Assembly (NCBI GenBank): GCA_977020255.1
Contig: CDROCS010001688.1
Span: 124,001 to 188,000, forward strand
Source of the DNA: Obrimoposthia wandeli
Taxonomy: Eukaryota
Length of the DNA stretch: 64,000 nt
Reading direction: 5' to 3'
Below, piece by piece: positions 24,859-35,253 of this stretch; within the stretch, counting starts at the first letter, position 1, and each line of letters opens with the position of its first letter. Below the pieces are notes generated by a model. That model made no database searches, was not told the origin of the DNA, and saw only the letters and a program-made list of their open reading frames with translations. A program made the position numbers and the translations under genes.

Positions 24859-24887
24859 AAAAAAGCCCGCAGTAGCGGGCTTTTTTT
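24859..24887. terminator. Bidirectional terminator
   Basis: AAAAAGCCCGC-agta-GCGGGCTTTTTT between convergent genes. Confidence 0.85.
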
Positions 24888-25752
24888 AATAAGATTGTTG
24901 ACTATAATCTTTTTTATTGTTTTTTTTAAGCATTTGAATAATATCTGATAAGTGGTCAATGGATTTAATTGTTGGCTTTATTATTGGAACCGTTAAAATT
25001 TCTTTATATTCATCGCTTACAACTATATCTGCTTTAATTTTATTATCTTGTACGACCTTATAAAAATTTGAGATTTCTTTTTGACACTTCATTAAAGAGG
25101 TTATCGTATTATCAATAGATATGATCATTTGCTCTGTACATGAATATAGTTCTGCGACTTCTTTGAAACCAACCTTATTAACCAATCCTAATAAATCAAC
25201 GTCATATGTTGATTTTGACTTATGGAATTCATCGATTATTGTATTATATTTTTTTGTCCTATAATTCCATATATTTAGTGTTGAATTATAGGCGTCTTGG
25301 CTTTCTAAAATATTAGTAACTATATCGTATCTGTCATACTCACTAAAAACTAAAACATCATTTGACTGTATGTGTTCTGATGATGTCTTGTAATTTATAA
25401 CATCTTTTAATCCAACGAATCGCATTTTATGTTGTTCAATCTTTTTTATTTCACATTTTAGACTAAATAATGCATTTATTTGCCTTGTTACATCAAGGAA
25501 TACTTTATCTAAACTTCGTTTGTCATTTTTTCTCTTTTGTAGAGTCTCTTTTCTAGTATTCAAAATATATGCAGCCATAACACCAAAAAATGGCGCTATA
25601 ACAAATTTTGATATTCCGTCTGCAATTTTATAAAGCGAATCAATATTTATTTCTTGAATACTTCCCGTAAACAAAAAAGGAAGGAAGGCTAATAATAAAA
25701 GCGAAAGTTCAGCTAATAATAAAACTATAAACCATTTGAAAATATCTTTCAT
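24886..25752 (-). CDS. AT-rich orphan protein with two N-terminal TM helices
   Basis: Intact 288-codon frame, visibly much lower GC than its flanks; no motif recognised. Confidence 0.7.
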   Translation of the reverse strand: MKDIFKWFIVLLLAELSLLLLAFLPFLFTGSIQEINIDSLYKIADGISKFVIAPFFGVMAAYILNTRKETLQKRKNDKRSLDKVFLDVTRQINALFSLKCEIKKIEQHKMRFVGLKDVINYKTSSEHIQSNDVLVFSEYDRYDIVTNILESQDAYNSTLNIWNYRTKKYNTIIDEFHKSKSTYDVDLLGLVNKVGFKEVAELYSCTEQMIISIDNTITSLMKCQKEISNFYKVVQDNKIKADIVVSDEYKEILTVPIIKPTIKSIDHLSDIIQMLKKNNKKDYSQQSY

Positions 25753-25824
25753 AAACACCCTAAAAAACGCAGAAGACACTTAAGCATCTAATTAAAAAGG
25801 ATATTATCATGAATTATCACATTC

Positions 25825-25977
25825 TTAAATCCTATCTTCAAGTCGTGTCAAACGAGAGTCCATTTTTTGAATTATTGTTTTCATCCAAGCAATATCTGTT
25901 TTCATAGCAATACCAGTACCAAACGCCGAGCAAAAACCAGTTGCCGCGGCAACTAGTACAGTTTGATATAACTCCAT
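25825..25977 (-). CDS. 50-aa phage TM + coiled-coil protein (not in ORF track)
   Basis: AAGGA RBS; MELYQTVLVAAATGFCSAFGTGIAMKTDIAWMKTIIQKMDSRLTRLEDRI*. Confidence 0.65.
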   Translation of the reverse strand: MELYQTVLVAAATGFCSAFGTGIAMKTDIAWMKTIIQKMDSRLTRLEDRI

Positions 25978-25986
25978 CCAGATTCC

Positions 25987-26184
25987 TTATTTCTTCTCTT
26001 TACGGAACGTATCCCACAAGCCGATCAACATGGTCACTACAATGGGAATCGTGCCGCCAACTTGTGTACCTGATTCAGTTACACTCATATCAACAAGATC
26101 CTGGTTACTAACCAAGCCAGCTATCGCACTGGCGAGAAGGATTAGACCTGTTTTAGTGCTTTTCTGTGATAAATCGATGTTCAT
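25987..26184 (-). CDS. 65-aa two-TM phage membrane protein (holin-like)
   Basis: Two hydrophobic segments and a basic C-terminus RKEKK; ATGA overlap with the upstream ORF. Confidence 0.65.
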   Translation of the reverse strand: MNIDLSQKSTKTGLILLASAIAGLVSNQDLVDMSVTESGTQVGGTIPIVVTMLIGLWDTFRKEKK

Positions 26185-26279
26185 AGTACCTTCCATTGTT
26201 TAAGGTATTTCAGCGCGAATGCGCCAGCCACGACACCAACTACGCTGATGCCAACTTTCTTCCAATTCGCTTTTGTCAT
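26181..26279 (-). CDS. 32-aa single-TM phage peptide (not in ORF track)
   Basis: MTKANWKKVGISVVGVVAGAFALKYLKQWKVL*; ATGA overlaps with both neighbours. Confidence 0.65.
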   Translation of the reverse strand: MTKANWKKVGISVVGVVAGAFALKYLKQWKVL

Positions 26280-26469
26280 GCTAACGTCACTCCTTCCATG
26301 ACTGCCCTCATCGGATATTTACGACCGACTTCTATACGCGCCATGGCTTGCAGTACGTTATCTAAAGCATTAATCGGTTCGTTCTTAGGAATACCCGTCC
26401 ACTTGCTGACCATATCTGCGTAATGGTCGAGTCATTTTCGTTGGCTGGTGCGAATGTGTGTACGATGCT
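26276..26469 (-). pseudogene. C-terminal fragment of a PM2 P5-like virion/lytic protein
   Basis: SIVHTFAPANENDST-(1-nt frameshift)-YADMVSKWTGIPKNEPINALDNVLQAMARIEVGRKY..GVTLA*; N-terminal half missing. Confidence 0.65.
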
Positions 26470-26471
26470 GT

Positions 26472-26813
26472 AAAATTACTAAAATTTACTTTAAAACAAT
26501 TTCTCGCCCGTTGGCGTTCTTGGCAGGTATTGCTGTCTCCTACTTCATTTTTGATTCGGGCAATGACGGGATTATTTCGCAAGCGGTTGCCAGTGTTGAG
26601 TCAGTGGATGTGTCACCGTATAAAAATTATAAGATCGTGTCTTATTCAAAAATGCCCAATGCCACGCCGTTCTATACGCTCAAGTTAGATGACAAAACTA
26701 TCACCTCAGATGAACTGACAAAATTAGGGTTAACCCTGACCAATGTGTCTCGCTGCCAGTTGAAAATCGCTAATCAAAAGCAAGAATCACTCTCTCTAAC
26801 GTGTGGGCGCTAA
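26472..26813 (+). pseudogene. C-terminal fragment of inovirus pI/pXI (Zot-like assembly protein)
   Basis: KITKIYFKTISRPLAFLAGI resembles M13 pI KLTKIYLKKFSRVLCLAIG; TITSDELTKLGLTLTNVSRC resembles LINSDDLQKQGYSLTYIDLC; ATPase domain missing. Confidence 0.75.
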
Positions 26814-26814
26814 T

Positions 26815-27992
26815 ATGAAACGTTTCTTTTTCCTTGTTGCTATATTCCTTGCCTTGCCTGTTAATGCCAAGTTGATTGATGGGTTCGAGGCGCGTTGAAA
26901 TTGAATGTGATTGTCGATGATGGTGTTAAGGGTGCGGTGTCTTTCTCTGCTCCCGAATTAGACACTAACGACTTTCAGCCTTTTGTTGATGCGGTACTGG
27001 TTTCAAATGGCTTTAAGATGACGCCTGATGATGGTTTCTATCGTTTATCATTGGTTGCCCTAAATGATAGTAAGAAAGACGAAAAGCTGGTCATTGTACC
27101 GCCAGTGACGAAGTTCTACGATTTGAACTATGTGGAAAACGTTAAGATAAGTGATTTGATTCAAGCGGTGTTGACGGCGTATTCAAAAAATACAGGTGAG
27201 ATGCAAACTGCCTATTCAGTGATTACCTTGCCCAATATCAACTCGATGATTGTTACGGGGTCACCTTCTCAATTGACGCAAATTAATAACCTAATTACGC
27301 GTGTTGATGTCAGGCGTAAACAAGTGTTGATTGATGCCGTTGTGATGGACACCCGTCTTGGTGACAGTGAATCGATGGGTGTGAGCTTAGATGTGCTGTT
27401 AGAGGGCGCTGGATTTCGTTTGATTTCTAATCCTGTCACATCGATTAAGGAATCGTTGAAAGGTAGCAATATTATCTATGACAAAGGTGATGTGAGCGCC
27501 CTCGTCACGGCCATTACTCAAAATCAGAATACTAAGCTCTTATCTAAACCGTATCTGTTAGTGATGGATAGAGAAAAAGGGTCTATCAACGTCGGTCAGA
27601 ACGTGCCCTTCTTAGTCTCCACTGAAACCTCAAACAACGGGTCATTAGTGCAAAAAATAGAAAGGCAAAATGTGGGGCTTGGTTTGAGTGTTGTGCCGCA
27701 TATCGTGAATGATTCGGTAATACTTGCGATTAACCAAACATCATCGAGCGTGTCTGATAGTGATATTGCCTCCGATATTATTACCAACAATCGAGAAATA
27801 AACACGGTGGTTCAAGTGCTGGATGGTCAGTCCATAATTTTAGGGGGCTTGGTGTCGGATGAATCGAGAAAATCAGAATCCGGTGTGCCGCTATTGAAAG
27901 ATATACCGTGGATTGGTGGGTTATTCAGAACAACTTCTGATAAGTCGGTAAGCTCTCAAATGTCTGTATTAATCAAGGTCACGGTAATATAA
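26815..27992 (+). pseudogene. Inovirus pIV secretin, broken near the N-terminus
   Basis: Signal peptide ORF MKRFFFLVAIFLALPVNA..FEAR* (26815-26898) is out of frame with the secretin body ending GQSIILGGLV..SGVPLLKDIPWIGGLFR. Confidence 0.85.
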
Positions 27993-28275: not shown

Positions 28276-28650
28276 ATGGGAGAAACAATAATGGAAATTT
28301 TATCAAACCCAGTAGTAGCAGTTATTGGTTATATTTTGACTGTGATTTCTGGGTTAATTGCAATTAAAGAGTATTTCGCAAAAAAAGAAGCTGAAAGTAT
28401 TATTTTCATAAAATCAGGTGAGAATATAACGTTAAACAAGAAGGTGTCTGAATTTAAAAGTACTATCACTCAATTACAAGCAGAAGTTAACATTCAAGTT
28501 AATAAGAATAATCTAACACAAGAAACTTTAAATGAAATAAAAATAGAAAATAAAACATTGATAAATAAAAACAAAGAAGTAAGCCAAGGTGATAAGAGTC
28601 AGTATTTTGAGAAAAACAATGGCATGGTAAGTATTGATAACCGAGGTTAG
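28276..28650 (+). CDS. Single-TM coiled-coil protein with an N/Q/G-rich C-terminal motif; putative Lamassu effector
   Basis: TM PVVAVIGYILTVISGLIAI, heptad-like region, tail SQGDKSQYFEKNNGMVSIDNRG; stop is 1 nt before the next ATG. Confidence 0.7.
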   Translation: MGETIMEILSNPVVAVIGYILTVISGLIAIKEYFAKKEAESIIFIKSGENITLNKKVSEFKSTITQLQAEVNIQVNKNNLTQETLNEIKIENKTLINKNKEVSQGDKSQYFEKNNGMVSIDNRG

Positions 28651-28651
28651 T

Positions 28652-29203
28652 ATGTCTTCTCAAGGAGTAGTTTTTAAAGATAATCTTGGTCCTGTTAGTG
28701 TCACTACGTCACCTATTATGAATAGACAAAGTGCAATAGCTAGCCTGATTGAGATTATAGCTGATACGTTTAGTTTTGACGAAGACATGTCACGAGAACC
28801 CGCAGAAGTAGATGTAAAAATAGATTTTAACAATCTAGAAAGAACTGTTTGGATTGTTGACTCATATAAAGAGTCAGCATTGATAATTGATAGCGCAATT
28901 GATTCATTAGACCTTAGCATTATAGATGGAAGTAAAAAACTAAAACGTCAAATAAATCAACTGTACAAAAAATCATTGTCAAAGTTTAATATAAATACAC
29001 GTCTTATTGACCTCGAATTATTGAGAATTCATTCTGACAACATTGTAGAAGATGTTCATCAGCAAGTAAAAAATCTTGTTGAAAACAGCAAAAACCTAGA
29101 TGATACTTTCTTAAGTGAAGATATTGATAATGGTGTTATTTTAATTGTGAGTTATTGCATTGTTGAGTGCGTCGTATTGGAGAACCCCAATGATTACAAT
29201 TGA
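28652..29203 (+). CDS. Stand-alone ABC-three-component CTD (LmuA C-terminal domain-like)
   Basis: GAGG RBS and ATG 28652; EPAEVDVKIDFNNL and C-terminal IVSYCIVECVVLENP resemble CTD motifs; no room for a catalytic effector domain. Confidence 0.7.
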   Translation: MSSQGVVFKDNLGPVSVTTSPIMNRQSAIASLIEIIADTFSFDEDMSREPAEVDVKIDFNNLERTVWIVDSYKESALIIDSAIDSLDLSIIDGSKKLKRQINQLYKKSLSKFNINTRLIDLELLRIHSDNIVEDVHQQVKNLVENSKNLDDTFLSEDIDNGVILIVSYCIVECVVLENPNDYN

Positions 29204-29420
29204 CAGTCACCCCAAAGCAAATCTTATTTATCTAGGTGCATTAATTGTTTCATATTTATCAAAAAATAAACGAACCAGTTATGACCTTGACGATACTTAT
29301 AACTATTTAAGAAGTGAAATTGATATTTCATTCGAATTATACGTTTACACTTTAGATTGGCTATATCTCTCTGGCATCATCGATCTAAACGAAGAAGGTG
29401 AAATTATTTATGCGTCTTAA
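29190..29420 (+). CDS. lmuC: ABC-3C middle component / LmuC-like small protein
   Basis: 76 aa; LIYLGALIV..FELYVYTLDWLYLSGII pattern; overlaps both neighbours. Confidence 0.75.
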   Translation: MITIDSHPKANLIYLGALIVSYLSKNKRTSYDLDDTYNYLRSEIDISFELYVYTLDWLYLSGIIDLNEEGEIIYAS

Positions 29421-31107
29421 CTCATTAATTGTAACTGTTAACTCTAAAATAATAAGAGATGTTGTTTTTAAAGATGGCTTAAACTTAATTGTAAATAAAT
29501 CATCCGAACTATTTAAAACAGGTAACAGCGTAGGTAAATCTACTCTATCACGTTTGATTGATTATTTATTCATGTCTGATGGTAAAGATATCCATACAGA
29601 TGATGAATTTAAAAAAATAATCCCTGAAATTGAATCATTGATAATAAATAATAGTGTTGTAGTAACTTTGAATTTTACAAGTTACAACAATAAACCCCAT
29701 CAAATATCAAGGTCTCTAGCTATGAAGGCTAGTGATTCAGATTTTTGGGTTGACAATAATGAGGTTGACAAAAATACTTATTTAAAATTCATATCATATT
29801 CTATCTTTGGTCTACTATCAGACAAACCAAGTGTTCGTAATTTATCTCATAAATTCATCAGAAATACGCATACAAAGATGCAGAAAACCTTGAAAGTTCT
29901 TTTCACAAAGACATCTCCTGACATTTATGATGAGCTATATCTTTTTCTTTTTAACTTTCAAGGTTTACCGCTTTTAAAGGATAAAGCAAAATTAAGACGA
30001 GAAATTAACGCATTAACTCGAGACCTTACTGCTTATAATAAGCCAAATAAACAAAGTGTTCTAAAAAAACTAATAAAACCTCTTGAACTAGATGTAAAAT
30101 TGATTGATGAAAAAATAAATTCTTTTGATTTCACCGATAGCCATGATATTTGCGTAGACAAATTAGTTGAAATTCATTCGGAAATTTCTGATTTAGTTGT
30201 TAAGCACTCTAATATTTCAATTAAAGCAAATCAATTAAAAAAATCCATACGCAATATTAATACCTCCATTACAGACGTAAATGGGCAGGATTTAAAAGAC
30301 ATCTATAGTGGAGCTAATGTAGCATTGTCTGATGGTGTTGTGCATTCTTATAAGGATATGGTTTTATTTCACAATAAAGTTATATCAAATAAAGTTAAGT
30401 TTCTTTCTGGCGATTTGGTGAAGCTAGATAATGAACTCCTTAAATTAAATGAATGTATAAACGTACTACATAATGATGAATCTACACTTTTCAAAACAAT
30501 TGTAGAACCTGACGTGTTATCTTCTATATCTCAAATGTATAATAAAAAAACGCAACATATTGAGAAAATAGCTGAAGTGAAATCAACAATCAATAAGATT
30601 CAATCTACAGAGGAAATAAAAAATAATAAGGAAAATGAGCAATGTTCAATTTCTGAAAGAATAGAAAAAAGCATAATTAATCTTGATTCTAATTTGGAAT
30701 TGTTTAATACATTCTTTTCGGAGCTGACAAATGTATTTTATGGAGAACGTTACGTTTTCGATATTAACTTCAATTCAGACAAGGCCAAGTGTGATTTTGA
30801 CATTTCATCTTCAAGCCCTAACCCAACTGGCGGGAAAAAGAAAGGTGAACTTACATCATTTGATTTTGCTTACATTAAATTCATTAAAAGTATTAATTTA
30901 AACCGACCATCATTTATCATTCACGATAGTATTGAAGATGTTGATGTAAATCAGATATCTGACATTTTCAGAGAAGCATCTGTTCTTGATGGGCAATATA
31001 TTGTATCTGTACTAAGTGATAAACTTTCAAATTCTAGCCTTTCTAGCTATCTTGAAACATCGGTTATATTGGAACTATCTGAAAATGATAAATTTTTCAA
31101 GATTTAG
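29410..31107 (+). CDS. lmuB: Short SMC/Rad50-like ABC ATPase (DUF2326 / LmuB-like)
   Basis: F.DGLNLIV, Walker A GNSVGKSTL, long coiled coil, signature GGKKKG, Walker B FIIHDSIE. Confidence 0.85.
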   Translation: MRLNSLIVTVNSKIIRDVVFKDGLNLIVNKSSELFKTGNSVGKSTLSRLIDYLFMSDGKDIHTDDEFKKIIPEIESLIINNSVVVTLNFTSYNNKPHQISRSLAMKASDSDFWVDNNEVDKNTYLKFISYSIFGLLSDKPSVRNLSHKFIRNTHTKMQKTLKVLFTKTSPDIYDELYLFLFNFQGLPLLKDKAKLRREINALTRDLTAYNKPNKQSVLKKLIKPLELDVKLIDEKINSFDFTDSHDICVDKLVEIHSEISDLVVKHSNISIKANQLKKSIRNINTSITDVNGQDLKDIYSGANVALSDGVVHSYKDMVLFHNKVISNKVKFLSGDLVKLDNELLKLNECINVLHNDESTLFKTIVEPDVLSSISQMYNKKTQHIEKIAEVKSTINKIQSTEEIKNNKENEQCSISERIEKSIINLDSNLELFNTFFSELTNVFYGERYVFDINFNSDKAKCDFDISSSSPNPTGGKKKGELTSFDFAYIKFIKSINLNRPSFIIHDSIEDVDVNQISDIFREASVLDGQYIVSVLSDKLSNSSLSSYLETSVILELSENDKFFKI

Positions 31108-31232: not shown

Positions 31233-31985
31233 ATGAACATTGAAGATTATATGGAATATATTAATCACCGTTTTACAGTAAATTTATTTGAAGGACAGTT
31301 TTCAAACGAATATAGATGTTCTAAGTGTGGTGATGGTGTACTTACTTTTGTTCCAGAACAATTCCATAAACATGAAACACAAGAATCTTTAAATTGCCGT
31401 CATGACGAAGATTGGGAACCTGATTGGATTCAGTATATATTTACTGCATGTTTAGTATGTAAGAGTTGTTCTGAAAATTATGTTGTCTCGGGCACTGGTC
31501 ACCTTCAAAATGAGTGGGATAATGAGGAAGGTTCAATTCATTATGATATTTTTTACCCTAAATTTTTCATACCTACGATTCATATATTTTCGATACCTCC
31601 AAACACTCCTAACTTAATAGCTAATATTATAGAAGCGTCATTTTCTTTAGCTTGGACTGATTATTCAGGGGCTGGTAATAAACTTCGTGTTGCTCTAGAG
31701 TTAATTGTTTCGGGGCTTGTTGCAGATGATACTTTGTCGCTAGGTCACAAAATTAATGCTATTGATGATGAACTAAGCGACATACGTGAAATGCTAAAAG
31801 CCATTAAATGGTTAGGTAATCAAAGTAGTCATGAGGCTAAACTTGAAGAATATGATTTAGCATTCGCGTTTAAAATCACGAAAAGTATTTTGCAACAATT
31901 ATATCCAGCACCTGATGAAACAAAAGCTCTAATGGCTCAAGTCCAAATGGTAAATTACGCTAAAGGCTCTATCGCAAAAAAATAA
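31233..31985 (+). CDS. DUF4145 (HEPN-like) protein with an N-terminal zinc-ribbon
   Basis: CSKC and CKSC pairs; A.NKLRVALELIV, LGHKIN, IKWLGNQSSHE. Confidence 0.75.
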   Translation: MNIEDYMEYINHRFTVNLFEGQFSNEYRCSKCGDGVLTFVPEQFHKHETQESLNCRHDEDWEPDWIQYIFTACLVCKSCSENYVVSGTGHLQNEWDNEEGSIHYDIFYPKFFIPTIHIFSIPPNTPNLIANIIEASFSLAWTDYSGAGNKLRVALELIVSGLVADDTLSLGHKINAIDDELSDIREMLKAIKWLGNQSSHEAKLEEYDLAFAFKITKSILQQLYPAPDETKALMAQVQMVNYAKGSIAKK

Positions 31986-33593: not shown

Positions 33594-33866
33594 ATGGAAA
33601 TCTATACTTACTCAGAAGCTCGACAAAACCTGAAGTCTGTAATGGATAAAGTTGAATCAAACTGCGAAGAAGCAATTATTCATCGTCGCGACGGCGAGAA
33701 TATGGTGCTAATGAGCGAGTCAGAATACAACGGTTGGGTTGAGACAATGAGAATTTATTCTAACCCTGCTCAACGCAAGCACATTGAAGAGTCTATCGAG
33801 CAATTCAAATCTGGTGATGTAAGTGTCTTCTCGCTTGAAGAACTTGAGCGATTATCTAATGACTAG
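33594..33866 (+). CDS. yefM: YefM/Phd antitoxin
   Basis: YTYSEARQNLKSVMDKV..IIHRRDGENMVLMSESEYNGWVET. Confidence 0.93.
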   Translation: MEIYTYSEARQNLKSVMDKVESNCEEAIIHRRDGENMVLMSESEYNGWVETMRIYSNPAQRKHIEESIEQFKSGDVSVFSLEELERLSND

Positions 33867-34122
33867 GCTTATAGCATTCAGTGTAAAATCACTTGCTGAC
33901 TATAACGAATGGGCGTTAATGGACAAAAAGGTGTTCAAGCGCATTGGTAAGCTAATTGTATCTGTCCTTCGCGACCCATACCAAGGAGAAGGAAAGCCTG
34001 AACCACTCAAGCATAACCTTTCTGGTTATTGGTCACGTCGAATAACGCAAGAGCACAGGTTGGTTTACCAAGTAACCGAAACCCACATAAACATAGTCTC
34101 GTGCAAAGAGCATTACAGCTAA
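33859..34122 (+). CDS. yoeB: YoeB/Txe mRNA interferase toxin
   Basis: RDPYQGEGKPEPLKHNLSGYWSRRITQEHRLVY; ATG overlaps the yefM end. Confidence 0.95.
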   Translation: MTRLIAFSVKSLADYNEWALMDKKVFKRIGKLIVSVLRDPYQGEGKPEPLKHNLSGYWSRRITQEHRLVYQVTETHINIVSCKEHYS

Positions 34123-34596: not shown

Positions 34597-35253
34597 ATGG
34601 CAAAAGATTACGAGGTATTTAATCAAGTCGATTTTTCTAATCAAGATCTGAGTGATTCATATTTTAAGGGCTGTAAATTTTTTAGGTGTGACTTTAACCG
34701 TGCAAACCTAAGAGATGCACGCTTTGATGACTGTGTCTTTATTGAGCAAGGTGCTATCGAGGGCTGTCATTTCGATTATAGTGATTTACGCGATGCATCT
34801 TTTAAGAACTGCAAACTTTCAATGTCTAATTTCAAAGGTGCTAAGTGTTTTGGCATTGAATTTAGAAGTTGTGATTTAAAAGGTGCCAATTTCATACAAG
34901 CAAGCTTCTCTAACCAAATTAGCAATAGTATGTATTTTTGCTCTGCTTATATCACAGGCTGTAACCTTTCCTACGCTAACTTTGAACGACAATGCATAGA
35001 GAAATGCGACTTGTTCGAAAATAGGTGGATGGGCGCTAATCTGCAAGGCGCTTCTCTTAAAGGTTCAGATTTAAGCCGAGGTTCATTTTCTGAAGATTGT
35101 TGGGGTCAGTTTTATATACAAGATTGTGACCTAAGTAATTCAGAATTAAACGGCTTAAACCCACGAAAAGTCGACTTAAGTGGTGTAAAGATCTGTGTAT
35201 GGCAACAAGAGCAATTACTAGAGCAGCTTGGGTTAATCGTATTACCTAATTAG
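34597..35253 (+). CDS. qnr: Qnr pentapeptide-repeat quinolone-resistance protein (QnrVC/QnrC-like)
   Basis: 218 aa; YFCSAYITGCNLSYANF, CDLFENRW, WQQEQLLEQLG. Confidence 0.95.
   Translation: MAKDYEVFNQVDFSNQDLSDSYFKGCKFFRCDFNRANLRDARFDDCVFIEQGAIEGCHFDYSDLRDASFKNCKLSMSNFKGAKCFGIEFRSCDLKGANFIQASFSNQISNSMYFCSAYITGCNLSYANFERQCIEKCDLFENRWMGANLQGASLKGSDLSRGSFSEDCWGQFYIQDCDLSNSELNGLNPRKVDLSGVKICVWQQEQLLEQLGLIVLPN

What the first reader, a model, noticed from the sequence alone, without database searches (positions are those of the whole stretch)
28276..31107. Four-gene Lamassu-type locus with a split effector and a matched, possibly amyloid, signalling motif
Seen: four tightly coupled intact genes (1-nt gap, then 14-nt and 11-nt overlaps): a TM/coiled-coil protein, a 183-aa CTD-like protein, an LmuC-like protein and an SMC-like ATPase. 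The C-terminus of gene 1 (SQG..YFEKNNGMVSI, 28582-28647) and the N-terminus of gene 2 (SQG.VFKDNLGPVSV, 28658-28702) share F-x-x-N-x-G-x-V-S-[IV], with swapped charges (E-K versus K-D). Gene 2 has its own RBS and ATG. Established: in Lamassu/ABC-three-component systems (e.g. DdmABC) LmuA is normally a catalytic effector fused to the CTD that the SMC ATPase holds inactive. In fungal NWD2/HET-S pairs and bacterial BASS/Bell pairs, adjacent sensor and membrane-effector genes share a short terminal motif that templates an amyloid fold. Inference: DNA sensing releases the CTD, whose N-terminal motif seeds assembly of the TM protein into a membrane-damaging oligomer, i.e. Lamassu coupled to amyloid signalling. 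I do not recall this architecture being described but cannot confirm novelty.
Basis: partly seen in the sequence, partly recalled or inferred. Interest (0 to 1): 0.9.

Follow-up and report, generated by a model that had tools for sequence, protein, structure and literature searches.

The report
Lamassu-like defence with matched peptide coupling
A four-gene, Lamassu-like (ABC-3C) phage-defence operon in which the usual enzyme "warhead" is replaced by a short peptide tag that matches the tail of a separately encoded small membrane protein. The layout is the same as in the amyloid-signalling Bab/Agp system, it is widespread, and I found no description of it in the papers I could search.

Summary
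Four intact, tightly coupled genes sit at 28276-31107:
- g1: a 119/124-aa single-pass membrane plus coiled-coil protein.
- g2: a 183-aa protein with a disordered 24-residue N-terminus followed by a helical CTD10-type domain.
- g3: an MC6 middle component.
- g4: a 565-aa SMC/LmuB-like ABC ATPase.

In this window alone the shared motif F-x-x-N-x-G-x-V-S-[IV] is only marginally significant (p about 0.04). It is real at family level:
- 44 related loci keep a separate small gene directly upstream of g2, and the two are never fused.
- The g1 tail is nearly invariant across 113 protein clusters.
- Across 12 CTD10 subfamilies the tail motif and the N-terminal motif change together (z = 8; 0 of 200,000 permutations reach the observed match).
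- CTD10 relatives that carry a fused HNH or SMEK domain lack the small gene.
- In one subfamily the small gene is a homologue of Bab, the amyloid-activated pore former of the E. coli Bab/Agp system.

Best reading: DNA sensing frees and clusters the CTD10 protein. Its N-terminal tag then templates the membrane protein's tail, and the assembled membrane protein kills the cell. Amyloid templating is inferred, not shown. The "swapped charges" and "split gene" ideas are not supported. No paper I could search links Lamassu/ABC-3C with amyloid signalling, but the founding ABC-3C paper could not be read.

The parts
28276..28650 (+). g1: small membrane protein (124 aa; 119 aa if it starts at 28291). 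N-terminal TM helix, long coiled region, conserved C-terminal tail. Proposed executioner.
   Evidence: ORF. Hydropathy. Family of 142 clusters, all unannotated. Alignment A3.
28309..28365 (+). g1 transmembrane helix (residues 12-30), with family-invariant N, V, G-Y and I-A positions.
28576..28647 (+). g1 C-terminal tail motif (last 24 residues; family consensus [IV]-x-Q-G-[ED]-K-S-Q-Y-F-Q-[ED]-N-S-G-P-V-N-I-D-N-R-G-stop).
   Evidence: Near 100% conserved across 113 clusters. The window copy deviates at four near-invariant positions.
28652..29203 (+). g2: CTD10-type protein (183 aa) with no enzymatic domain. LmuA-equivalent reduced to adaptor tag plus CTD.
   Evidence: Pfam CTD10 at 4.8e-4, below cutoff. 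Relatives score above cutoff. AF2 model is all-helical from residue 25. Foldseek top hit is YydB of the YydD-YydB model.
28652..28723 (+). g2 N-terminal tag (residues 1-24; motif G-V-x-F-x-x-N-x-G-P-V-x-[IV] at residues 5-17). Predicted disordered.
   Evidence: V6, F8, N11, G13 and P14 are at least 90% conserved. pLDDT is below 50 for residues 1-6 and 15-23, with no secondary structure before residue 25.
29190..29420 (+). g3: middle component (LmuC-equivalent), 76 aa.
   Evidence: Pfam MC6 7.4e-16, 58 bits against a cutoff of 27.
29410..31107 (+). g4: SMC/Rad50-like ABC ATPase (LmuB-equivalent), 565 aa, with a coiled-coil insertion.
   Evidence: PADLOC PDC-M68B 2.7e-40. AF2 model has two head halves flanking long helices. 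Foldseek hits: YydD 1e-17, Lamassu LmuB 9hqu_A, 9uxh_F and 9hqx_B at about 1e-10.
29521..29544 (+). g4 Walker A (G-N-S-V-G-K-S-T, residues 38-45).
   Evidence: G38, N39, G42, K43 and T45 are invariant in alignment A5.
30913..30927 (+). g4 Walker B-like strand (F-I-I-H-D, residues 502-506), followed by S rather than E. This is a deviant form, as reported for LmuB.
   Evidence: F502, D506 and E509 are invariant. Deviant Walker B in LmuB: bioRxiv 10.1101/2025.06.23.660979.

Best explanation
This is an abortive-infection defence operon of the ABC-3C / type II Lamassu kind, MC6-CTD10 branch.

By analogy with solved Lamassu complexes, g4 (SMC-like ATPase) and g3 (middle component) hold g2 through its CTD10 domain. 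They release it when foreign DNA is sensed. This step is inferred.

In canonical relatives the N-terminus of the CTD10 protein is a nuclease (HNH) or SMEK domain. Here that slot holds a disordered tag of about 20 residues. The tag matches the cytoplasmic C-terminal tail of g1, a separately encoded single-pass membrane protein.

Proposed mechanism: freed g2 oligomerises through CTD10 and brings its tags together. The clustered tags adopt a cross-beta (amyloid-like) fold that templates the g1 tails. The resulting g1 assembly clusters its TM helices and breaches the membrane, killing the infected cell.

Shown here:
- The four-part anatomy.
- Family membership of g2, g3 and g4.
- Conservation and subfamily-level co-variation of the paired motifs.
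- The fused-effector and small-gene layouts do not occur together in the loci read (see the Against line for how few fused loci were read).
- A Bab homologue sits in the g1 position in sister loci.

Inferred:
- DNA sensing.
- Release and oligomerisation of g2.
- The amyloid nature of the contact.
- Membrane killing.
For: Family assignments:
- g3 is MC6 at 7e-16, and g4 hits PDC-M68B at 3e-40.
- The g4 model matches LmuB and YydD.
- The g2 family is CTD10, and the g2 N-terminus is disordered.

The tag is conserved in 23 homologues of about 45% identity.

A small TM or Bab-like gene ends within -23 to +8 nt of the g2 start in 41 of the 42 scripted loci. The exception is L025, where the g1 stop was read by eye. 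L088 and L089 have gaps of 17 and 4 nt. That gives 44 loci from many Gammaproteobacteria and metagenomes.

Each motif class is matched to its own partner. Over 12 classes the diagonal sum is 486 against 286 +/- 25 for permutations, z = 8, with 0 of 200,000 permutations reaching it. Examples:
- ..NNGNNSGVISG.. with ..NCGDNSGVMVA..
- ..QKSGSHSKNNQTVV.. with ..QRAGKYSRNVQLVV..
- ..IKGDFIYN with ..IEGDFYN..

The g1 tail is about 100% conserved over 21 residues, while the rest of g1 is 30-40% identical.

N-terminal extensions of 129 CTD10 representatives are enriched in G (2.7x), N (2.1x) and Q (1.9x).

HNH-CTD10 locus L082 has three genes and no small upstream gene. Fused forms are HNH or SMEK.

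The small upstream proteins of L081, L083, L084 and L085 form one family (alignment A4). Its member L084 scores Pfam HetE-N at 1.8e-12 and matches PDB 9h9v 'Babybass' at 2.5e-5 over residues 1-78, including D2, G11, Y14 and D15, the residues mutated in the Bab study.

Bab/Agp has been shown experimentally to work by amyloid templating between a C-terminal and an N-terminal motif (bioRxiv 10.1101/2024.11.07.622273).

Lamassu LmuA is released and oligomerises through its CTD (bioRxiv 10.1101/2025.03.14.643221).

Related loci lie in P4-like satellites and a P2-like prophage, which are known defence hotspots.
Against: - No experiment or multimer model shows amyloid formation.
- The shared core in the window family is short (about 12-13 residues), against about 20 in BASS11.
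- The window's g1 is not detectably a Bell/Babybell domain. hhalign aligns only 9 tail columns, E = 0.055.
- Within the window family there is no locus-by-locus co-variation. The cognate partner ranks 25th of 42 for the window.
- The window's tail carries four rare substitutions, so this particular copy could be weakened.
- The window's g2 scores below Pfam's CTD10 cutoff.
- PADLOC's Lamassu models do not hit g4.
- Defence activity of this branch (PDC-M68 is only a candidate) was not found tested in the papers I could search.
- The claim that fused-effector and small-gene layouts do not occur together rests on few fused loci. Only L082 was read in full. In L087 the nearest upstream ORF is an unrelated 199-aa one, 105 nt away.
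Confidence: 0.55

Rival explanations
1. Same four-part system and same motif-mediated coupling, but the contact is an ordinary stoichiometric beta-strand pairing (zipper or strand augmentation) rather than self-propagating amyloid. For example, released g2 oligomers simply cross-link a fixed number of g1 tails. Alternatively, g1 tethers the sensor complex to the membrane in the resting state.
For: The shared core is short, 12-13 residues. The window-type g1 is already membrane-inserted, so only clustering is needed. LmuA-type CTDs form defined tetramers, not fibrils. Nothing computed here tells amyloid from non-amyloid beta pairing.
Against: The layout, termini, G/N/Q composition and disorder all match proven amyloid signalling pairs. 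A true Bab homologue, whose activation is amyloid-dependent, fills the same slot in sister loci. The 21-residue tail is far more conserved than a simple docking peptide would need, and more conserved than its partner tag.
Confidence: 0.3
2. The two motifs do not contact each other. Each binds the same third site, for example a groove on CTD10, MC6 or the ATPase. The g1 tail would then compete with the g2 tag, acting as a regulator or anti-toxin-like brake rather than an executioner. The toxic activity would lie elsewhere.
For: Mimicry of a shared binding site would also produce matched motifs that co-vary by subfamily. g1 has no recognisable toxic domain.
Against: The tag sits exactly where HNH or SMEK effectors sit in relatives, and those relatives lack g1. 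This argues that tag plus g1 replaces the effector. In sister loci g1 is a known pore-forming executioner family. No other candidate effector is encoded in the operon.
Confidence: 0.08
3. g1 and g2 are a recently split single gene, or are fused by programmed frameshifting, and the motif pair is a tandem repeat of one protein.
For: A 1-nt gap between the g1 stop and the g2 ATG. Two similar motifs lie about 20 residues apart on either side of the junction.
Against: The genes are separate in all 44 loci. Spacings run from -23 to +8 nt in 41 of the 42 scripted loci and are 17 and 4 nt in L088 and L089, so the frame relation is not conserved. g2 homologues keep their own Met and a length of 182 aa. 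Among the 150 listed CTD10 representatives the longer ones carry HNH or SMEK, never TM-coil.
Confidence: 0.02

Closest known systems
Bab/Agp abortive-infection system of E. coli ECOR25 (BASS11 amyloid signalling; Ibarlosa et al., bioRxiv 10.1101/2024.11.07.622273)
   Same: Adjacent genes. A small (~110 aa) membrane-targeting protein carries the motif at its C-terminus, and the sensor-side protein carries the matching motif at its extreme N-terminus. The motif is G/N-rich and about 20 residues long. The system is phage- or satellite-borne. In sister CTD10 loci the small protein is a sequence homologue of Bab (PDB 9h9v, E = 2.5e-5).
   Different: The sensor side here is a three-protein SMC-like ABC-3C module (CTD10 + MC6 + ATPase), not a TPR-GreA/B-PIN protein. 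The window's small protein is a constitutive single-pass TM plus coiled coil, not a Babybell domain. The motif sequence differs and its shared core is shorter. Amyloid behaviour is untested.
Type II Lamassu / ABC-3C systems (LmuACB, DdmABC; CTD1-12 and MC1-8 classes)
   Same: Gene order effector-CTD, middle component, SMC-like ATPase. MC6 and CTD10 families. The ATPase model matches LmuB structures (about 1e-10). Deviant Walker B. Expected release and oligomerisation of the CTD protein.
   Different: No enzymatic domain is fused to the CTD. A fourth gene supplies the presumed effector in trans through a matched peptide. PADLOC Lamassu HMMs do not hit. No sequence-level match to solved LmuA, LmuB or LmuC.
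PADLOC candidate system PDC-M68
   Same: g4 matches PDC-M68B (2.7e-40). The HNH-CTD10 protein of related locus L082 matches PDC-M68A (5.8e-34). So the window belongs to the same ATPase/CTD10 lineage.
   Different: The window has no PDC-M68A (HNH) protein, so the PADLOC system definition is not met. The tag plus g1 replaces it.
Bacillus subtilis YydB-YydD (PDB 9a6c integrative model)
   Same: Best structural match of both g2 (to YydB chain B, TMq 0.54, Foldseek E = 0.036, no match at E <= 0.001) and g4 (to YydD, 1e-17). It is therefore a pairing of an ABC-3C-like ATPase with a CTD protein.
   Different: YydB is 481 aa with a large N-terminal domain fused to the matched region. No separate tagged membrane protein is known to me for it.
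Fungal NWD2/HET-S and bacterial NLR/Bell BASS pairs
   Same: Adjacent genes. The receptor has an N-terminal motif and the membrane executioner a C-terminal motif. Motif families differ between pairs but match within a pair.
   Different: The receptor is a STAND NTPase (NLR) that oligomerises on ligand binding. Those bacterial pairs were reported mainly in multicellular Actinobacteria and Cyanobacteria, not in unicellular Gammaproteobacteria.

Membership tests
ABC-3C / type II Lamassu (broad sense) | SMC/Rad50-like ABC ATPase with the head split by a coiled coil | tested here: met
   The AF2 model (pLDDT 76) has N- and C-terminal head halves around long helices. Foldseek hits: YydD 1e-17, SMC heads, LmuB 9hqu_A/9uxh_F/9hqx_B at about 1e-10. 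Walker A is invariant.
ABC-3C / type II Lamassu (broad sense) | Small middle component (LmuC/MC) encoded between the CTD gene and the ATPase gene | tested here: met
   Pfam MC6 7.4e-16, 58.3 bits against a cutoff of 27.2. Same in all related loci checked.
ABC-3C / type II Lamassu (broad sense) | Third protein ending in one of the CTD1-12 domains | tested here: met
   The window's g2 alone is sub-threshold (CTD10 21.1 bits against 28.1). Its profile-defined family includes members above threshold (L072 g2 40.8; P0042 45.0; P0173 68.2).
ABC-3C / type II Lamassu (broad sense) | Enzymatic effector domain fused N-terminal to the CTD | tested here: not met
   Only a disordered 24-residue tag precedes the CTD. 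129 of the 150 listed representatives are full-length proteins of 165-230 aa starting with Met, i.e. CTD plus a short N-terminal extension. Seven carry a fused HNH or SMEK domain.
ABC-3C / type II Lamassu (broad sense) | Recognition by curated Lamassu (LmuA/LmuB/LmuC) HMMs | tested here: not met
   PADLOC returns only PDC-M68B for g4 and nothing for g1-g3 at E <= 0.1. DefenseFinder was not available.
ABC-3C / type II Lamassu (broad sense) | Protection against phage or plasmids; activation by DNA ends or palindromes | not testable with these tools
   Only context is available: relatives lie in P4-like satellites and a P2-like prophage.
PADLOC PDC-M68 | Both PDC-M68A and PDC-M68B present | tested here: not met
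   M68B is present. M68A is absent from the window and present in HNH-CTD10 locus L082.
Amyloid signalling pair (BASS / Bab-Agp type) | Matching short motif at the C-terminus of the executioner and the N-terminus of the sensor-side protein, encoded by adjacent genes | tested here: met
Amyloid signalling pair (BASS / Bab-Agp type) | Motif families differ between systems but match within a pair (co-variation) | tested here: met
   12-class matrix: the diagonal is best in 8 of 12 rows and 9 of 12 columns, z = 8, 0 of 200,000 permutations. There is no fine-scale co-variation inside the window family.
Amyloid signalling pair (BASS / Bab-Agp type) | Executioner is a Bell/HeLo-type helical membrane-targeting domain | tested here: inconclusive
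   Window-type g1: no profile match to Bab-type proteins beyond the tail. There is only a loose resemblance between F-L-S-N-P-x-V-G-x-I-G-Y and helix 1 of Bab. Sister loci: L084 meets this (HetE-N 1.8e-12; 9h9v 2.5e-5), and L081, L083 and L085 align with it as one family.
Amyloid signalling pair (BASS / Bab-Agp type) | G/N/Q-rich motif, disordered in the monomer | tested here: met
   Enrichment G 2.7x, N 2.1x, Q 1.9x. pLDDT is below 50 for g2 residues 1-6 and 15-23, with no secondary structure before residue 25.
Amyloid signalling pair (BASS / Bab-Agp type) | Forms cross-beta fibrils, seeds its partner, behaves as a prion-forming domain | not testable with these tools
   No multimer modelling or experiment was available.

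The most novel reading that the evidence does not exclude
A large, unrecognised branch of Lamassu/ABC-3C immunity has given up fused enzymes. This is the motif-only CTD10 type: 350 representatives of 50%-identity clusters match the CTD10 profile, and of the 150 listed, 129 are full-length motif-only proteins. It signals instead by prion-like amyloid templating from the released CTD protein to small membrane executioners, either Bab homologues or bare TM-coil proteins. There are at least a dozen mutually distinct motif 'codes'. This would join SMC-type DNA sensing to amyloid signalling and extend such signalling to ordinary unicellular Gammaproteobacteria and their P2/P4 elements.
Probability: 0.45. 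Interest if true: 0.88.

Novelty: new variant of a known kind. Interest (0 to 1): 0.8.

Why it matters
Lamassu is now understood as "sequester, release and oligomerise a fused enzyme". Amyloid signalling in bacteria has one tested example, Bab/Agp, whose sensing step is unclear.

This locus and its relatives suggest the two are combined in nature. A structurally tractable SMC-like sensor with a known release-and-oligomerise switch sits upstream of a matched-peptide relay to a membrane killer.

That would:
- give amyloid signalling a defined nucleation mechanism;
- explain why most CTD10 proteins have no effector domain;
- supply a dozen naturally distinct tag/tail pairs, useful for testing specificity and as synthetic-biology parts;
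- make many "hypothetical" 80-120-aa proteins next to ABC ATPases interpretable.

Current defence finders would miss these systems. PADLOC hits only one of the four genes.

Tried and rejected
- Single-sequence homology search with g1 found nothing. A profile of locus-derived homologues was needed.
- Sequence searches of g1, g2 and g4 against PDB chains gave no meaningful hits.
- NCBIfam gave nothing for g1-g4.
- The ESM Atlas gave only unnamed clusters for g1.
- Megablast of the operon against plasmids found no match.
- Profile-profile comparison of window-type g1 with Bab-type proteins aligned only 9 tail columns. I do not call the window's g1 a Bell domain.
- Locus-by-locus co-variation inside the window family is absent, and the residue between V and I does not correlate. 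Co-variation exists only between subfamilies.
- Charge complementarity (E-K against K-D) is not conserved.
- A recent split or programmed frameshift is rejected: the genes are never fused and the spacing and frame vary.
- A DNA-level repeat is rejected: 16/30 nt identity.
- The promoter/terminator scan was uninformative: 25 promoter-like sites against 20 expected, and no terminator.
- The founding ABC-3C paper (Krishnan et al. 2020, NAR) is not held in the library. I could not check whether it already noted tag-only CTD10 proteins with a small upstream gene.
- The BASS logos are figures and not readable. The BASS11 part of Bab is not in the PDB chain. So I could not test whether any motif here belongs to BASS1-11.


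Full report
**1. What is in the window**

- **g1** (28276-28650) has one strongly hydrophobic stretch, residues 12-30, mean Kyte-Doolittle hydropathy 2.38. An acidic segment precedes it and K-E-Y-F-A-K-K follows it, so the long coiled region and the tail should be cytoplasmic. By alignment with relatives the true start is probably the second ATG at 28291.
- **g2** (28652-29203) gives a weak Pfam CTD10 hit.
- **g3** is a clear MC6 middle component (7.4e-16).
- **g4** hits only PADLOC's candidate model PDC-M68B (2.7e-40). None of the four hits a Lamassu model.

The operon has 29.5% G+C against 38.9% for the window. Around it lie a secretin-like gene, a DUF4145 gene, a phage DUF3653 gene and a Phd/YoeB pair. 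It is therefore imported DNA in a mobile or defence-rich stretch.

**2. Is the motif match more than chance?**

In the window alone, barely.
- FEKNNGMVSI and FKDNLGPVSV share 5 identities plus I/V.
- The local alignment score is 24, and 3.75% of composition-preserving shuffles reach it.
- The coding DNA is only 16/30 identical with synonymous differences, so it is not a nucleotide repeat.

The case rests on relatives.

*g2 relatives.* g2 has 23 homologues at about 45% identity, nearly all 182 aa. V6, F8, N11, G13 and P14 of the tag are at least 90% conserved.

*The upstream gene.* Nineteen genomic loci were recovered from Kosakonia, Enterobacter, Tatumella, Photorhabdus, Vibrio, Pseudoalteromonas, Colwellia, Microbulbifer and others. 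All carry an 84-101-aa gene that ends a few nucleotides (1-5 where measured) before the g2 start. In Siccibacter (L008) that gene is frameshifted. Its tail reads Q-G-[ED]-[KR]-S-Q-Y-F-Q-[ED]-N-x-G-x-V-x-I-D-N-R-G-stop.

*The g1 family.* A profile search with these small proteins found 142 clusters, none annotated. The last 21 residues are close to 100% conserved, while the rest of the protein is 30-40% identical.

*The window copy.* It departs from that consensus at four near-invariant positions (Q to E, E/D to K, P to M, N to S).

**3. The pattern is general, and it co-varies**

A profile of g2 searched against 1.8 billion representative proteins gave 350 relatives.
- Of the 150 listed, 129 are full-length proteins of 165-230 aa starting with Met: a CTD10 domain preceded by a 10-50-residue extension.
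- That extension is enriched in G (2.7x), N (2.1x) and Q (1.9x).
- Seven longer ones carry HNH or SMEK domains in front of a region matched by the same CTD10-family profile. Pfam CTD10 itself is above cutoff in six of them, and P0110 is not.
- Locus L082, an HNH-CTD10 locus, has three genes with no small upstream gene. Its first protein is PADLOC's PDC-M68A.

A metagenome scan with a different CTD10 subfamily returned 62 loci. In those with enough flank:
- A small gene of 57-113 aa again abuts the CTD10 gene.
- MC6 and a ~565-aa ATPase follow it.
- The small protein's tail matches its own partner's tag, even though the motifs differ completely between subfamilies.

Examples of matched pairs:
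- ..NNGNNSGVISG.. with ..NCGDNSGVMVA..
- ..QKSGSHSKNNQTVV.. with ..QRAGKYSRNVQLVV..
- ..NNGIVMGDNHGTINF.. with ..NNGLSMGNNRGTIIF..
- From two further look-ups..IKGDFIYN with ..IEGDFYN.., and ..NHGVMNIDN.. with ..NYGIVNIGN...

With loci grouped into 12 classes, the cognate tail-tag score is the best in 8 of 12 rows and 9 of 12 columns. The diagonal sum is 486 against 286 +/- 25 for permuted pairings, and 0 of 200,000 permutations reach it.

Inside the window's own family there is no finer co-variation. The evidence is for subfamily-level "codes", not locus-level ones.

**4. Link to proven amyloid signalling**

In one subfamily (L081, L083, L084, L085) the small protein is not a TM protein. The four align as one family.

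Its member L084 hits Pfam HetE-N (1.8e-12). It also matches PDB 9h9v "Babybass" at 2.5e-5 over residues 1-78. The match includes D2, G11, Y14 and D15, exactly the residues whose mutation inactivates Bab in Ibarlosa et al. (bioRxiv 10.1101/2024.11.07.622273).

That study shows:
- Both peptides form amyloid.
- Phage T5 triggers Agp-dependent assembly of the motif.
- This activates Bab to kill the cell.

[quoted passage not shown] It never mentions ABC, SMC or Lamassu.

So CTD10-type ABC-3C systems use a Bab homologue in the very slot that g1 occupies in the window.

The window-type g1 itself could not be tied to the Babybell fold. Profile-profile comparison aligns only nine tail columns, N-N-G-M-V-S-I-D against N-N-S-G-E-I-K-I-D.

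**5. Link to Lamassu**

*g4.* The AF2 model (pLDDT 76) is an SMC-type head split by long helices. Its best structural matches are B. subtilis YydD (1e-17), SMC heads, and the LmuB chains of four Lamassu cryo-EM entries at about 1e-10. Walker A is invariant in the family. Walker B is deviant (D followed by S), as reported for LmuB.

*g2.* The AF2 model (pLDDT 71) has no secondary structure before residue 25 and is then all-helical. pLDDT is below 50 for residues 1-6 and 15-23. Its top match is YydB, the partner of YydD in the same PDB model. That match is weak (Foldseek E = 0.036, TMq 0.54) and no match reaches E <= 0.001.

*Published mechanism.* Recent Lamassu work equates LmuACB with ABC-3C, covering CTD1-12 and MC1-8. 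It shows that the LmuA CTD is sequestered by LmuB2-LmuC. After DNA-end sensing LmuA is freed and oligomerises through its CTD, which switches the effector on (bioRxiv 10.1101/2025.03.14.643221 and 10.1101/2025.06.23.660979).

**6. Mechanism proposed**

The tag occupies the position that HNH or SMEK domains hold in CTD10 relatives. Tag-bearing systems gain exactly one extra gene whose product carries the matching tail. I therefore read the tag plus g1 as a two-piece effector.

Proposed sequence:
1. Sensing releases g2.
2. CTD10 oligomerisation concentrates the tags, the step that nucleates amyloid in NLR and Agp systems.
3. The folded tags template the cytoplasmic tails of g1.
4. The stacked tails force the TM helices (or helix 1 of Bab-type proteins) together and breach the membrane.

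What was shown and what is inferred:
- Shown: the anatomy, family membership, conservation, co-variation, and the finding that fused and in-trans layouts do not occur together in the loci read. That last point rests on few fused loci.
- Inferred: sensing, release, the amyloid state, and killing.

Probabilities: motif-mediated coupling about 0.85. The amyloid version about 0.55. An ordinary stoichiometric beta-pairing is the main rival, at 0.3.

**7. Novelty**

- No held paper contains both "amyloid signaling" and "Lamassu".
- The three papers that contain both "amyloid" and "Lamassu" are unrelated.
- The Lamassu structure preprints that I searched for the terms do not mention membrane effectors or CTD10.
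- A 2026 amyloid review and a 2025 motif-detection paper do not mention ABC or SMC partners.
- The founding ABC-3C paper could not be read, so prior notice there cannot be excluded.

Both halves are known kinds. The combination is the new element: the in-trans, tag-coupled membrane effector, a bare TM-coil executioner, and many motif classes in unicellular Gammaproteobacteria and P2/P4 elements. I rate it a new variant of a known kind.

**8. Caveats**

- The window's own pair is the weakest in its family, and its tail carries rare substitutions. This copy may be less active.
- Start codons of some metagenomic g1 and g2 genes were assigned mechanically.
- Class boundaries were set by 40% CTD identity plus inspection.
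- Related loci share ancestry, so the permutation test supports co-variation between classes, not twelve independent events in a strict sense.

Noticed in passing
window 26895-27992 (+), with 25825-26813: A 365-aa secretin-like protein matches only the C-terminal secretin part of GspD/PilQ models (TIGR02517 5e-61, below cutoff). It looks like a filamentous-phage pIV-type gene within phage remnants just upstream of the operon.
   Followed up: partly
window 31233-31985 (+): A 250-aa protein with DUF4145 (1.6e-11) and N-terminal Cys-rich motifs, directly downstream of the ATPase gene. No PADLOC hit. It could be another defence-island gene.
   Followed up: partly
window 33594-34122 (+): An overlapping Phd/YefM antitoxin (7.7e-23) and YoeB toxin (1.7e-33) pair.
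   Followed up: partly
window 34597-35253 (+): A 218-aa pentapeptide-repeat protein (Pfam Pentapeptide 1.7e-28), Qnr/MfpA-like in form.
   Followed up: no
window 24886-25779 (-): A very AT-rich (29% G+C) gene for a 297-aa protein with an N-terminal membrane segment. No Pfam, NCBIfam or PADLOC hit.
   Followed up: partly
L008 3700-4000 (Siccibacter colletis) and L065 2720-3369: Decayed copies of the system. The g1 homologue in L008 is frameshifted between the TM helix and the tail. In L065 g1 is disrupted and g2 is truncated to 131 aa.
   Followed up: partly
L001, L004-L006 (P4-like satellites) and L089 (P2-like prophage): Window-type four-gene systems sit between Psu/Ogr-Delta genes and the integrase of P4-like satellites, and next to the gpD/gpU tail genes of a P2-like prophage. 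These are the known defence hotspots of those elements.
   Followed up: partly
PDB 9a6c (B. subtilis YydD-YydB): The best structural match for both g4 (YydD, 1e-17) and g2 (YydB, weak: E = 0.036, TMq 0.54) is a B. subtilis pair. This suggests the yyd operon is an ABC-3C system of the same branch with a fused effector.
   Followed up: no
window 28400-28575 (g1 residues ~45-100): The window's g1 carries about 30 extra residues in the coiled region compared with most relatives (84-94 aa). L088 and L089 have similarly long versions (120-122 aa).
   Followed up: partly
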